A stretch of DNA of 57,392 nt, counting the filler, from Platydemus manokwari (taxonomy: Eukaryota), in NCBI GenBank assembly GCA_037951405.1. It is 6 parts of 6 records of this genome, joined end to end, with 100 filler letters (N's around TTAATTAATTAA, not from the genome) between each part and the next. Parts side by side here need not be neighbours in the genome. Positions count along the whole stretch, not along the records: positions 46,376 to 57,392 come from JBBMOY010972195.1; 5 more parts are not named here. The stretch is one strand, 5' to 3'. This document shows positions 46,387 through 54,770 of the stretch, piece after piece. Numbering within the stretch: position 1 is the stretch's first letter; each line of letters starts with the position of its first letter. Made by a program: the position numbers and the translations under genes. A model generated the notes under the pieces. The model saw only the letters and a list, made by a program, of their open reading frames with translations, was not told the origin of the DNA and ran no database searches.

Positions 46387-46522
46387 ATATGGAGGAGCTG
46401 AGGGATATTTGAAATCTTGTGGATTATCCAAAGAGCAAATTGGTAAAATAAAAATCAATTTATCTCGACCATTTGCTAAACCACCAGTATTTGGCATTGA
46501 AAATTCAGACGAAACCAAATAA
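46387..46522 (+). CDS. Last coding exon of a second Y_phosphatase3-family phosphatase paralog (upstream exons lost in the gap)
   Basis: TTACAG| then (R)YGGAEGYLKSCGLSKEQIGKIKINLSRPFAKPPVFGIENSDETK*; same acceptor phase and sequence start as exon 53277-53361. Confidence 0.85.
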
Positions 46523-47865
46523 TTGATAAATTTATTCTTATTTATTGATTTATAAAATATTTTTGTGCAAAAACTATTATTTCAATAAAACAATAAAAAT
46601 GATTCTTCAAATTTATTGATTGATTCCTAATAGTCATGATTAAGAAAGATTTATGAAAATTTGCTATATTTTATCTCTATAAGAAATCTGACCATATGAA
46701 CATCACGAACAAATTTGAAGATAAAACATTTTTTGTGTCCACATATCTGGTTTAGAAACAATCACTGTTTGGAACTGATACAACTCAATTCTGGAGGAAA
46801 ATGAATGTTAGAGGACTATCGATTTTAGAAATCTGTCATATCTTTGGTACGATAACGATCATTCTCTGTCAGGCTAACCTCGATATTATATTACTCTGTT
46901 ATTGTTTGAAAATTCTTATTCCCTAAGTGTATTAGCCTACAGTAGTCCACGACTGCAGTTCATATTATTCTGTATAAAACTACGCATTTTAAGTTTGTAA
47001 ACTTTCTCCAGAAATATATTGGCTGCAATATTTCCAGTTCTATCAATAAAGTTTCATTGGCAGTAATTGCAGAAATCGATCGTTCAATATACCTGGTAAT
47101 CTTTTGTAGATTCATTTTGACATTTCTCTGCACTTGCTGAGTGCTTTTTAATCCCCAGATTAGTTATAGTCTGGTCTTTAACATGGCCATCCAGGCCGTT
47201 ACATTTCTTGCACTGCGGCCAAGCACTTTCGGTGTAATATTTATCAACGTTATTTAACTTGCTGGCTTAGTATTCAGTGCAATTTTGTTAGGATCGTATG
47301 GTCTTATGTTTAGAAAAAATACCACCAATGTTAAATATTAACTCTTCAGGCTGAAAGGCTAATGATGTCAAGAATGACAAATGAGATGATGCTCAAGAAA
47401 GCAGTAATAAAAACAAATCATATTAATATGCTTCAAATAATGTCATTAATTTACATTTGGCATTATCCGAAGTAGTTAGGTTAATTCGTGAATTATAATT
47501 ATCACCCATAATTAAAATACAGCAAATATAACAGCTGGCAAAAAAAGAACCTTACATTTCAAGGTAAAAATAATCCATTTGTAAAGGTTATGAGGAAAGT
47601 TTACTTAGAGATAATCTCAAAATATTAATTAGGCACAAGTAATTATATAAAATTATAATAAAATAATAATTATTAATAATAATAATTTAATTTCGAATTA
47701 TTATCATGATGTTTAAACCTTTCAAATACTCAAAATAATTATCCAATCAAAATTTAATTATAATTGTTATTAATATTATTATAAATATTCAATCAATATT
47801 TCACAGAACAAAATATATTTCATTTTAAATTAACAGAGAACAGTTTTCATGTTTATTTCTTACAT

Positions 47866-49407
47866 TCACATCAAGCGAGCTAGATCTATCTTTTTCAATG
47901 ATTCTATTAAAAACTTTAATTTCTTATTATCCAATGTCAATGATCTTATTGAAAGCTTCTGTGTGATTATAATCAAATACTTTGCAAAACACTTCACAGT
48001 TTTTCGGAAAGTATAAATATGTTTAAATGCTTTGTCGAAATCTAGAATATCATCTGGAATCCATTCCTCGACGAGGACCAACATAAATTCACCTACTATC
48101 ATCACGATGCTATGCAGCATATCAATCATTGAGCTATCATTCTCTACAAGTTTAGTGATTTTATCAATATGAAATACATCGATTATTTCAATGTGCAAGA
48201 ATATATTGGTAATTTCCAATGAATGAGTCTTGATTCGTTTATCGGTTTGAATGTTTAAAAATTGATTCCTCAATGTTTCTAATAACTGAATTTTTTCGTT
48301 TCTAGTTTTATCTTCACATAATATTTCATCGACTGTCTCAAACAAATTTGGAAAATAAATTTGATATTTTCTCAATTTTGAAACCAAATCAATATTAAAT
48401 TCTACTAATTTTTTCATGTATTTATTGTTTATCACATTAGGATCTTTGACTAGATTATTGAAGTTGAATTCAATGATTTGATTATCAAAAGGACATCTAC
48501 CTTGACATGTGCCGTACTTATTGATGCATTTCCAACATATTTTGTGATCACAATAGCCAAATTTCGCAAAATTACAATGATTCAGTGCTCGAGAACACAC
48601 CAAACAATAATCCACATCACTTTCAGTAACATTTGGTTGATGAGATTGATAAAGTTCACTGTTATCTTTTACTTTGAAAATGATGAACCATGTTAACTGG
48701 TCTTCTATTGAATTAAGAATGAATAAATCTTTATTTATATTGGTCAATATTTTCTTAAGAATTACTCTGTGATCAATATCAGTTTCGTCTAACATTGAAA
48801 TAAACATCATTTCCCACCAATCATTGAAAAGCGTTATCATGTATTCAAATTTTGTTCCCGCATTCAATAAATGCTGGTGTCTACTTGTTGCTTGATCTTC
48901 TTGATTTGCCTTTCGTAAAATATTCATAAACAATTGCACTTTATTCCAAAGATCGTTATCACTCAAATCTTTTTTGTAGTTATATATTTTCATCCAAACC
49001 CTTTTAATATCAACAATATCCTCTGCATTGATATTCGATTCAATAGATAAGATATTTTCTATTTTTTCTTTACATTCGCTCAACAATACAGACAATGTGG
49101 CGACGTGTTCACTACACAGAGATGTACATTCTGACCAAAGTTTCTCAGTCAAATCTGTACCGACTTTGGTTTGACTTAAAGAGATGTATTGATATTCCAG
49201 TAGAGTCTTTTGAATATTATTAACAACGAGATGATTGACCGCCTGCTTATCAAATGGACACTGACAATTTTCCACCAACACAAGGGCAGCGGCGCAATCT
49301 ATACACACTTTGTGATTGCAATTTCCGAAAATAACAACATTAGAACCATCAAATATTTCATAACAAATCTGACAATTATCGTCTCCATCATTGTTTAAAT
49401 TTAGCAT
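47866..49407 (-). CDS. Intronless double-RING protein (two RING C3HC3D + helical modules), putative E3 ubiquitin ligase, 513 aa
   Basis: CQIC...FGNCNHKVCIDC...CPFD (aa 12-53) and CLVC...FGYCDHKICWKC...CPFD (from aa 268); uninterrupted 1542-nt ORF in very AT-rich DNA. Confidence 0.88.
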   Translation of the reverse strand: MLNLNNDGDDNCQICYEIFDGSNVVIFGNCNHKVCIDCAAALVLVENCQCPFDKQAVNHLVVNNIQKTLLEYQYISLSQTKVGTDLTEKLWSECTSLCSEHVATLSVLLSECKEKIENILSIESNINAEDIVDIKRVWMKIYNYKKDLSDNDLWNKVQLFMNILRKANQEDQATSRHQHLLNAGTKFEYMITLFNDWWEMMFISMLDETDIDHRVILKKILTNINKDLFILNSIEDQLTWFIIFKVKDNSELYQSHQPNVTESDVDYCLVCSRALNHCNFAKFGYCDHKICWKCINKYGTCQGRCPFDNQIIEFNFNNLVKDPNVINNKYMKKLVEFNIDLVSKLRKYQIYFPNLFETVDEILCEDKTRNEKIQLLETLRNQFLNIQTDKRIKTHSLEITNIFLHIEIIDVFHIDKITKLVENDSSMIDMLHSIVMIVGEFMLVLVEEWIPDDILDFDKAFKHIYTFRKTVKCFAKYLIIITQKLSIRSLTLDNKKLKFLIESLKKIDLARLM

Positions 49408-53361: not shown

Positions 53362-53919
53362 TCAAATGAATAATTAACAGCTTAAATGAAGCAATTAATT
53401 ATTAAAATTATATTTTGATTAAAAATATATTTGTGGAATAATTTGTAATTGTTTTGACTTTAAACTGTATAATTAAAATAGAATTTGAAAATATTTTTCT
53501 TTGTGATATTGTATTTGTTTACACAGTATTGCTACTGGCAACATAAGGTTTAAAATATTTCCCAGAACTTGGCCTTTGCCCAACACAGAAATAACAGAGC
53601 CATTGAATATTAAATTAGTTGAAGAAATTAAAAACGATATTTGAAGTTCTCACAGAGAATTTCATTTTTCGTTGACTCAAGCAATCAATGTGTTTATCTG
53701 TTAGCATTGTAACAGTATCATGTTAATCAATTAAACCATGTTTCGTTTTAATTGTGTTTTGAATTTATCGAAACTTGTAAAAGTTGTCTTGGTAATAGTG
53801 TAATAGTATTTGAAGTCAATTTGTAATAGGAAGATTGAAAGTTTCTGTCGATTGGTTGACAATGTCTCCTTTTTAAAATTATTTTCTGAGGCATTTAAAT
53901 AATTTCATCCGCAGAGTCA

Positions 53920-54770
53920 GTACAATGACATTGTCTGCATTATAACAAGTCATTATCAGAAAGAACATCTTTTATTGAATTATATAAAGTAACGTAATCT
54001 ATCCTATAATTATCATATACATATTTTTGGATTTTATAAAATAAAATTTTAAATATCAAATTTGAAAGTTTTTATTGTTATAAAAAATATTTTTAAAATG
54101 TTTTGAAAATACAAAATTAATTTTTATTAAAAATATAACAATTATTTTATCGTGATCACAAAATATGTTGGAAATCCATCAATAAGTGCGGCACATGTCA
54201 AGGTAGATGTCCTTTTGATAATCAAATCATTGAATTCAACTTCATTAATCGGGTCAAAGATCCTCATGTGATAAACAATAAATACATGAAAAAACTAGTA
54301 GAATTTAATATTGATTTGGTTTCAAAATTGAGAAAATATCGAATTTATTTTCCAAATTTGTTGGAGACTGTCGATCAAATATTATGTGAAAATAAAACTA
54401 GAAACGTAAAAGTATTTAACTGCAATCATACAGAAGCTATCAAAAAATCCATTGACATTGGATAATAAAAAATTAATATTTAATAGAATCATTGAGGAAA
54501 ATCGATATAGCTGGCTTGATGTGAATGCAAGAAATAAACATGATAATTGTTCGCAGTTGATTTAAAATGAAATATATTTTGTTCTGTGGAGGTTTTGATT
54601 AAATATTGATTGAATATTTATAATAATATTAAAAACAATTATAATTATATTCTCATATGATAATTGTGGTGAGAATTTGAACGTTTTAAACATCACAATT
54701 ACCATTTTAAATTCTAATATTATTATTAATAATTATTATTTTATAATAATTGTTTAACTTATATTGGTGT
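53920..54770 (+). pseudogene. Inverted, doubly deleted copy of the double-RING gene with its flanks
   Basis: 53920-54150 matches revcomp 49833-49610 (upstream region); 54152-54407 matches revcomp about 48551-48296 (second RING onward); 54408-54770 matches revcomp about 47985-47635 (C-terminus and 3' flank). Start codon and first module are missing. Confidence 0.88.

What the first reader, a model, noticed from the sequence alone, without database searches (positions are those of the whole stretch)
46387..54770. Alternating phosphatase / RING-ligase cluster with a head-to-head gene pair
Seen on one contig with no spacer inside: phosphatase paralog A last exon (+), double-RING gene (-), phosphatase B (+), RING pseudogene (+). 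The RING and phosphatase B start codons diverge only 768 bp apart (49407 and 50176). Both genes are locally duplicated. Inference: a co-regulated, co-duplicating two-gene module (ubiquitin ligase plus microbial-type phosphatase) under birth-and-death evolution, as seen in innate-immunity loci. I know of no described system of this kind, but chance adjacency is possible.
Basis: partly seen in the sequence, partly recalled or inferred. Interest (0 to 1): 0.7.

Follow-up and report, generated by a model that had tools for sequence, protein, structure and literature searches.

The report
RING ligase beside duplicated phosphatase genes
In an unidentified AT-rich eukaryote, an intact gene of an undescribed double-RING ubiquitin-ligase family sits head-to-head with a bacterial/fungal-type phosphatase gene, but the local duplicates look like ordinary, separate rearrangements, not proof that the two genes work together.

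Summary
The piece holds four features:
- the last exon of phosphatase paralog A (46387-46522, +);
- an intact intronless 513-aa double-RING gene (47866-49407, -);
- phosphatase B (PF13350) in three GT-AG exons (50176-53361, +);
- a dead RING copy (53920-54756, +).

The two start codons diverge, with 768 bp between them.

The dead RING copy is an inverted copy of one discrete segment (47646-49833). It has two internal deletions, dN/dS near 1, and has lost two zinc ligands. The phosphatase repeat is only 88 nt, and the spacers that a shared duplication unit should contain share nothing. The pattern therefore fits separate local rearrangements better than one co-duplicating two-gene unit.

Co-regulation could not be tested because no RNA run holds the locus. 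About ten true RING-family contigs from metagenomes carry no phosphatase, but their flanks are short.

The most interesting part is the RING protein. It belongs to a nameless, fast-diverging family of two [TRAF6/Rbx1-like C3HC3D RING + helical bundle] modules. That family is known only from short anonymous contigs.

Verdict: a real locus, best explained as an ordinary segmental-duplication cluster. A functional module is unproven and unlikely.

The parts
46387..46522 (+). Last exon of phosphatase paralog A. It encodes 44 aa plus a split codon, with the stop at 46520-46522. The rest of the gene lies beyond the edge of the piece.
   Evidence: An AG acceptor lies at 46385-46386. The exon matches PF13350 positions 213-238. 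It is 85% identical over 88 nt to the last exon of phosphatase B.
47866..49407 (-). Intact, intronless double-RING gene of 513 aa. RING1 ligands are C12, C15, C30, H32, C35, C38, C50 and D53. RING2 ligands are C268, C271, C286, H288, C291, C294, C305 and D308. Each RING is followed by a helical bundle of about 200 aa.
   Evidence: ORF. Pfam RING hits. The protein is collinear with relatives of 500-570 aa. AlphaFold2 model with pLDDT 87 and pTM 0.86. The RINGs match Ring1b, TRIM32 and Rad18 and TRAF6 and Rbx1.
49408..50175 (.). Divergent intergenic region of 768 bp at 19% GC. The stretch 49612-49833 belongs to the RING duplicon. The stretch 49834-50175 is unique and lies next to phosphatase B.
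   Evidence: The second haplotype in the only DNA run carries 94-bp and 9-bp deletions here.
50176..50703 (+). Phosphatase B exon 1, 176 aa. It holds the CX5R catalytic loop (C-QAGKD-R). The GT donor lies at 50704.
   Evidence: PF13350 E 1.5e-23, profile positions 25-168. Related to 8dhi and to M. tuberculosis PtpB. P-loop alignment with P0001.
51666..51772 (+). Phosphatase B exon 2, 35 codons plus 2 nt. It lies between an AG at 51664-51665 and a GT at 51773-51774.
   Evidence: Read from the sequence. Its length fills the missing PF13350 profile positions 169-212. It has no Pfam hit of its own, so this exon is inferred.
53277..53361 (+). Phosphatase B exon 3, the last exon, with the stop at 53359-53361.
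   Evidence: PF13350 positions 213-238, E 9e-4. AG acceptor at 53275-53276.
53920..54756 (+). Inverted, internally deleted dead copy of the RING segment. Block 53920-54150 corresponds to 49833-49612 (89%). Block 54148-54411 corresponds to 48555-48292 (95%, residues 285-372). Block 54409-54751 corresponds to 47983-47651 (82%). The parent stretches 48556-49611 (start codon and RING1) and 47984-48291 are missing.
   Evidence: In the 264-nt coding block, 11 codons differ by amino acid and 2 are synonymous changes. Zinc ligands are lost (C286R, C294S).
52950..53160 (.). High-copy short repeat inside intron 2 of phosphatase B. It is not part of the gene pair. An inverted copy lies at 56439-56538.
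   Evidence: Contig depth reaches about 4500, against a baseline of about 30. Inverted repeat of 77-85% identity.

Best explanation
This is an ordinary gene-family cluster shaped by local rearrangements in an AT-rich, heterozygous eukaryote whose species is not disclosed.

Two tandem paralogs of a PF13350 cysteine phosphatase lie about 6.9 kb apart on the + strand. Both are probably active on phosphotyrosine, phosphoinositide or inositol-phosphate substrates, since the CX5R loop is intact. An intronless gene of a lineage-restricted double-RING E3 ligase family lies between them on the other strand.

Later, the RING segment alone (gene plus about 430 bp upstream and about 220 bp downstream) was copied in inverted orientation to the far side of phosphatase B. 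That copy has since decayed through two deletions and neutral substitutions.

The head-to-head arrangement of the intact RING gene and phosphatase B, 768 bp apart, is most likely neighbourhood without obligatory functional coupling.

Shown: the gene models, the domain identities, the duplication architecture and the decay of the second copy. Inferred: ligase and phosphatase activity, the order of events and the absence of coupling.
For: - Gene models and domains.
- The duplicon is discrete and inverted, with deletions of 1056 bp and 308 bp.
- The pseudogene evolves neutrally and has lost ligands C286 and C294.
- Phosphatase homology is limited to 88 nt and ends 5 nt before the phosphatase B stop. 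The 3' flanks and the phosphatase-to-RING spacers score like shuffled sequence (z 0.5-2.8, against 38.7 for the positive control).
- Only the RING-proximal part of the intergenic DNA was copied with the RING gene.
- The visible ratio is one intact RING gene to two phosphatase genes.
- A phosphatase HMM that recovers phosphatase B (E 1e-17) hits none of 57 metagenome loci. These include about ten true RING-family members, among them two full-length double-RING genes (L017, L022) with 0.8-1 kb of upstream DNA. They also include L010, where the upstream neighbour is a WDHD1/Mcl1-like gene.
- The other haplotype of the intergenic region carries 94-bp and 9-bp deletions, so at least parts of it tolerate loss.
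Against: - The alternation phosphatase-RING-phosphatase-RING is what a duplication spanning both genes would give. The overall divergence of the RING copy (about 12% over 840 nt) is not statistically different from that of the phosphatase exon (15% over 88 nt). One old two-gene duplication followed by inversion and spacer turnover is therefore not excluded.
- Divergent pairs under 1 kb apart often share a bidirectional promoter.
- Expression could not be examined at all.
- The environmental contigs are too short to exclude a phosphatase 1-2 kb away.
- The DNA upstream of phosphatase A is cut off, so a further RING gene there cannot be excluded.
Confidence: 0.68

Rival explanations
1. The two genes form a functional module. 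The double-RING ligase and the phosphatase share a bidirectional promoter and act in one pathway. For example, the phosphatase could remove a phospho-degron or activating phosphate that controls ubiquitylation by the ligase. The pair would be amplified and pruned together under diversifying, immune-like selection.
For: - The start codons are head-to-head, 768 bp apart.
- The order alternates, with paralogs of both families within 8.4 kb.
- The RING family diverges fast: 42 clusters at 17-37% identity to the window's protein.
- One metagenome sample holds at least 11 contigs with the family motif.
- The RING ending is C3HC3D, as in TRAF6.
Against: - There is no shared duplication unit.
- The second RING copy is inverted and dead while the phosphatases persist.
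- No phosphatase was found beside any environmental family member.
- No expression data exist.
- No TRAF zinc fingers, MATH domain or other immune-type domains were found.
Confidence: 0.14
2. A single old segmental duplication covered both genes and was followed by inversion of the second RING copy. The unit [phosphatase + RING] would have duplicated once as a physical block, with no functional meaning. The second RING segment was then inverted, and the spacers were replaced by indels or repeats.
For: - The alternating order.
- The dead copy lies about where a tandem unit of 6890 bp would place it. The expected start is near 54536, and the copy is observed at 53920-54756.
- The divergence of the two repeat pairs is similar.
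Against: - The spacers 46465-47645 and 53355-53919 show no residual similarity, although other non-coding parts of the RING duplicon are still 82-89% identical.
- The homology blocks end exactly at the edges of the RING segment.
Confidence: 0.13
3. The locus is foreign DNA or an assembly artefact. The two genes would be part of an integrated giant-virus or other foreign block, or the inverted copy would be a mis-join of haplotypes.
For: - The language-model feature search places the RING protein nearest to RING proteins of Nucleocytoviricota.
- One giant-virus MAG contig carries tandem RING ORFs that match it.
- The phosphatase family is mainly bacterial and fungal.
- No single Logan contig spans the locus.
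Against: - The Atlas recognition score is below its reliability mark. The viral similarity is confined to the RING domain, and the viral proteins end in a canonical CPxC.
- Phosphatase B has two GT-AG introns of about 1 kb and 1.5 kb holding a host high-copy repeat.
- Composition is uniform across genes and flanks.
- The dead copy differs from its parent by 5-18% and by deletions, so it is not a duplicated haplotype.
- The independent run holds 92% of the stretch's words.
Confidence: 0.05

Closest known systems
TRAF6 and Rbx1 RING domains (C3HC3D-type RING ending in C-P-x-D)
   Same: Both RINGs have the spacing C-X2-C-X14-C-X-H-X2-C-X2-C-X10/11-C-X2-D. RING2 aligns best to the TRAF6 RING ('KCPVDNEIL' against 'RCPFDNQII') and next to Rbx1 ('CPLDN'). 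Profile hits are to dimeric RING E3s such as BRCA1, TRIM32, RNF4, Ring1b and TRAF6.
   Different: There are no TRAF-type zinc fingers, coiled-coil/MATH domain or cullin-binding strand. The protein instead has two RINGs, each followed by a helical bundle of about 200 aa with no specific structural relative. Single-domain E-values are weak (0.02).
RBR (RING-between-RING) ligases
   Same: Two RING-like zinc domains lie in one polypeptide. The RING1 of HOIL-1 is among the profile hits.
   Different: There is no IBR domain. The two RINGs are about 215 residues apart, separated by a helical bundle. RING2 is a canonical cross-brace RING similar to RING1, at 31% identity, and not the linear catalytic Rcat domain.
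PF13350 (Y_phosphatase3) phosphatases such as Mycobacterium tuberculosis PtpB
   Same: The Pfam match is E 2e-24, and the CX5R loop (C-x-AGKDRT) is conserved. The size is about 239 aa.
   Different: Identity to any relative found is only 25-30%, and those relatives are mostly Bacteroidota. The gene is eukaryotic, with two introns. A Ser stands where relatives have His before the catalytic Cys. The substrate is unknown.
Bidirectional (head-to-head) gene pairs and tandem birth-and-death gene clusters
   Same: Divergent starts less than 1 kb apart. Local paralogs plus a decaying pseudogene.
   Different: No evidence of shared regulation. The duplicates do not form a repeated two-gene unit.

Membership tests
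RING-type E3 ubiquitin ligase | Eight zinc ligands in cross-brace spacing | tested here: met
   RING1 ligands are C12, C15, C30, H32, C35, C38, C50 and D53. RING2 ligands are C268, C271, C286, H288, C291, C294, C305 and D308. In 13 relatives, thirteen of the sixteen positions are invariant and C30 is nearly so. D308 is not conserved and is replaced in several relatives.
RING-type E3 ubiquitin ligase | Profile match to RING models | tested here: met
   PF13639 scores 27.3 bits, exactly at its cut-off of 27.3, with two stretches. All 13 aligned relatives match PF13639, with a best E-value of 1.7e-11.
RING-type E3 ubiquitin ligase | RING fold | tested here: met
   AlphaFold2 model with pLDDT 87. 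Foldseek probability is 0.98-1.00 to the Ring1b, TRIM32 and Rad18 RINGs, but with E-values of 0.6-0.8 because only about 50-67 residues align.
RING-type E3 ubiquitin ligase | E2 binding and ubiquitin transfer | not testable with these tools
   This needs an in-vitro ubiquitylation assay.
TRAF family | TRAF-type zinc fingers and a C-terminal MATH/TRAF-C domain after the RING | tested here: not met
   No zf-TRAF or MATH hit in Pfam for this protein or for 12 relatives. The body is a helical bundle.
RBR ligases | RING1-IBR-Rcat architecture | tested here: not met
   No IBR hit. A helical segment of about 215 aa lies between two similar canonical RINGs.
PF13350 Y_phosphatase3 | Profile match above the gathering score | tested here: met
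   87.2 bits against a cut-off of 22.2 for exon 1. Exon 3 matches the profile's end.
PF13350 Y_phosphatase3 | Catalytic CX5R P-loop | tested here: met
   C-QAGKD-R in exon 1 aligns with HC-MAGKD-R of P0001 and with 8dhi.
PF13350 Y_phosphatase3 | Phosphatase activity and substrate class | not testable with these tools
   This needs an enzyme assay.
Co-regulated bidirectional gene pair | Divergent starts less than 1 kb apart | tested here: met
   Starts at 49407 and 50176, with 768 bp between them.
Co-regulated bidirectional gene pair | Correlated transcription from a shared promoter | not testable with these tools
   No RNA run holds the locus.
Conserved two-gene module | Linkage repeated among paralogs or across species | tested here: inconclusive
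Conserved two-gene module | Both genes duplicated as one unit | tested here: not met
   The repeats are separate blocks, the RING copy is inverted, and the spacers are unrelated.

The most novel reading that the evidence does not exclude
The double-RING proteins are an undescribed, fast-evolving family of E3 ligases. Each has two [C3HC3D RING + helical bundle] modules forming an intramolecular RING pair. In this lineage the family would be functionally wired to acquired PF13350 phosphatases as a divergently transcribed sensor/effector pair of an innate-defence type.
Probability: 0.08. Interest if true: 0.65.

Novelty: new member of a known kind. Interest (0 to 1): 0.27.

Why it matters
If the ligase and the phosphatase were truly coupled, this would be a new kind of eukaryotic two-gene signalling or defence cassette. 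The present evidence makes that unlikely.

What remains of some value is the double-RING family itself. It is seen only on short environmental or transcript-like contigs of AT-rich organisms. It is a candidate lineage-specific, rapidly evolving E3 family worth a look once a contiguous annotated genome is available.

Tried and rejected
- Word-based protein search with the RING protein found nothing. With phosphatase exon 1 it gave one weak bacterial hit. With the exon 1 + P0001 profile it gave only bacterial relatives at 25-30% identity and no clue to the organism.
- The look-up of encoding contigs and the search of earlier findings were closed, so the genomic context of the 42 RING relatives could not be read.
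- Cluster look-ups of 30 relatives gave no names or accessions. All but the spurious repeat-protein hit P0019 sit on contigs of 0.5-3.7 kb.
With the 2-sequence alignment it found nothing in metagenomes. It found one giant-virus MAG whose similarity is confined to the RING domain.
- Rfam and tRNA scans of the piece were empty.
- Pfam on ten other ORFs of the piece gave nothing.
- Foldseek and VIA-align gave no specific relative for the helical bodies. The best Z is 10.8, within the noise for helical bundles.
- The only run holding the locus is a DNA or unknown-type run kept as short contigs. It gives no expression, no splice confirmation and no contig spanning the whole locus.
Its exons were searched one by one by reference.
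- The organism could not be identified.
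Full report
**What is there**

The piece (46376-57392) is about 28% GC throughout. It carries no tRNA or Rfam match.

Reading the sequence and its ORFs gives four features.

(a) The last exon of phosphatase paralog A runs 46387-46522 on the + strand. It follows an AG acceptor, and its stop is at 46520-46522. It matches the end of PF13350, profile positions 213-238.

(b) A single uninterrupted ORF on the - strand, 47866-49407, encodes 513 aa.

(c) Phosphatase B lies on the + strand in three exons.
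- Exon 1 is 50176-50703. It matches PF13350 positions 25-168 (E 1.5e-23) and holds the catalytic loop C-QAGKD-R.
- Exon 2 is 51666-51772.
- Exon 3 is 53277-53361 and matches positions 213-238.
- Both introns are GT..AG.
- Exon 2 has no Pfam hit of its own. Its 35 codons fill the missing profile positions 169-212, and its end together with the start of exon 3 reads like the family's conserved C-terminal region. This exon is inferred.

(d) A RING-derived fragment on the + strand lies at 53920-54756.

The start codons of (b) and (c) diverge, with 768 bp of 19% GC DNA between them. tblastn with both proteins and 43 relatives found no further fragments in the piece.

**Duplication architecture**

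A self-comparison shows that the fragment in (d) is an inverted copy of one discrete parental segment, 47646-49833. That segment is the RING gene with about 430 bp of its upstream DNA and about 220 bp of its downstream DNA.

Three blocks survive:
- 53920-54150 corresponds to 49833-49612 (89%; this is upstream DNA).
- 54148-54411 corresponds to 48555-48292 (95%; residues 285-372).
- 54409-54751 corresponds to 47983-47651 (82%; the C-terminus and 3' flank).

Two parental stretches are missing:
- 48556-49611 (1056 bp), which holds the proximal upstream DNA, the start codon, RING1 and the first helical body.
- 47984-48291 (308 bp).

In the 264-nt coding block, 11 of the 13 differing codons change the amino acid. 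This gives dN/dS of about 1. Two zinc ligands of RING2 are replaced, C286R and C294S. The copy is dead.

The phosphatase repeat is a separate block of only 88 nt: 46377-46464 against 53267-53354, at 85% identity. It ends 5 nt before the phosphatase B stop. Beyond that point the 3' flanks score like shuffled sequence.

The spacers that a shared two-gene unit should contain are 46465-47645 and 53355-53919. They show no similarity in either orientation (z 2.8 and 0.5), whereas the positive control gives z 38.7. The phosphatase-proximal 342 bp of the intergenic region has no copy next to the dead RING fragment either.

In the first unit, phosphatase and RING are tail-to-tail. In the second they are head-to-tail.

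The simplest reading has two events:
- an older tandem duplication of the phosphatase;
- a separate inverted duplication of the RING segment, followed by decay.

One old two-gene duplication followed by inversion and spacer turnover is not excluded. The overall divergences are similar: about 12% over 840 nt for the RING copy and 15% over 88 nt for the phosphatase exon. Even that scenario would only show that neighbours were copied together, which any segmental duplication does.

**The proteins**

The phosphatase is a clear PF13350 member. Its solved relatives are 8dhi and M. tuberculosis PtpB. The closest sequences found are bacterial, at 25-30% identity.

The RING protein found nothing in the word-based search. 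The exhaustive HMMER search gave 42 representative clusters, and 28 of them scored E ≤ 1e-10. Most are 500-570 aa and collinear with the window's protein.

Thirty of these clusters were looked up. Apart from P0019, a spurious coiled-coil match to a 2507-aa repeat protein on a 430-kb JGI contig, none carries a name. All but one are singleton clusters, from Logan or ENA contigs of 0.5-3.7 kb. Many contigs are about the length of one mRNA.

In 13 full-length members the RING ligands are almost the only invariant columns. Both RINGs have the C3HC3D pattern ending in C-P-x-D. RING2 aligns best with the TRAF6 RING and next with Rbx1. The family profile hits dimeric RING E3s. The two halves of the protein are related, with RINGs 31% identical.

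AlphaFold2 with the 42-sequence alignment gives a confident model (pLDDT 87, pTM 0.86). The model has two modules, each a RING followed by a helical bundle. Only the RINGs find structural relatives, namely Ring1b, TRIM32 and Rad18. The helical parts match only generic bundles, with Z ≤ 10.8, inside the stated noise for helical proteins.

There are no TRAF zinc fingers, MATH domain or IBR domain. The protein is therefore neither a TRAF nor an RBR ligase. A plausible but untested mechanism is that the two RINGs form an intramolecular pair, as in dimeric RING E3s, with the bundles as variable recognition surfaces.

**Tests of linkage and co-regulation**

Only one public run holds the locus. It is a DNA or unknown-type run kept as short contigs, and no RNA run holds the locus.

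Laying that run's contigs on 48900-54850 shows several things:
- The locus is present piecewise. Baseline depth is about 28-45, with half-depth alternative contigs, so the organism is heterozygous.
- A second haplotype of the intergenic region carries 94-bp and 9-bp deletions.
- Extra depth over the two genes at ≥80% identity is only modest, so there are few close paralogs.
- A very high-copy repeat lies in intron 2 of phosphatase B.

A motif scan of JGI metagenome contigs used the invariant RING2 pattern and returned 57 loci. By a family HMM, about ten of these are true members with similarity beyond the RING. They include two full-length double-RING ORFs (L017 and L022). Eleven of the 57 contigs come from one sample, Ga0307474.

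A PF13350-type HMM was built from 120 relatives. It recovers the window's phosphatase B at E 1e-17, and it hits none of these loci.

The neighbours that can be seen are:
- a DDE_3 transposase (L003);
- a WDHD1/Mcl1-like gene (L010);
- nothing within 0.8-1 kb upstream (L017, L022).

This is weak negative evidence because the flanks are short.

**Verdict**

Birth-and-death turnover at the locus is real. The idea of a co-regulated, co-duplicating ligase-phosphatase module rests on a single intact divergent pair. It is contradicted by the separate, differently oriented duplication blocks, by the decay of the second RING copy, and by the lack of any second example.

Divergent neighbours under 1 kb apart are common in eukaryotic genomes, so chance adjacency is the default. 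I put about 0.68 on ordinary adjacency with separate rearrangements. I put 0.13 on a single meaningless two-gene duplication, 0.14 on real functional coupling, and 0.05 on a foreign-DNA or artefact explanation.

The giant-virus lead does not hold up. The similarity is confined to the RING domain, and the viral proteins end in a canonical CPxC. Phosphatase B also has introns holding a host repeat.

The organism could not be identified.

Noticed in passing
window 52950-53160 (intron 2 of phosphatase B) and 56439-56538: A short element is present in very high copy in the only run that holds the locus. Its depth reaches about 4500, against a baseline of about 30, and many variant contigs carry it. 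An inverted copy at 77-85% identity lies 3.3 kb downstream. It looks like a MITE- or SINE-type repeat.
   Followed up: partly
window 54850-55650: One strand is strongly purine- and A-rich (AT skew 0.38-0.46, positive GC skew), unlike the rest of the piece. Its ORFs have no Pfam match and its nature is unknown.
   Followed up: partly
window 49844-50027: A half-depth alternative contig indicates a second haplotype of the RING/phosphatase B intergenic region with 94-bp and 9-bp deletions.
   Followed up: no
L003 (Ga0307474_10066829) 74-2091, plus ten more contigs of the same sample: One metagenome sample holds 11 AT-rich contigs with the family's RING2 motif. They include full-length double-RING ORFs (L017, L022) and a C-terminal-half ORF lying divergent to a DDE_3 transposase. 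This suggests a multi-copy family in an uncultured eukaryote.
   Followed up: partly
L001 (IMGVR GVMAG-M-3300020165-35_000001) 9500-11030: A giant-virus MAG contig (about 20% GC) carries tandem small RING ORFs of 127-181 aa. Their similarity to the window's protein is confined to the RING, and they end in a canonical CPxC.
   Followed up: yes
L010 (Ga0256405_10036859) 186-4198: A one-module relative (RING + helical bundle, 201 aa) lies downstream of an intronless WDHD1/Mcl1-like ORF of 1035 aa on a 24% GC contig. Half-size members of the family therefore exist.
   Followed up: partly
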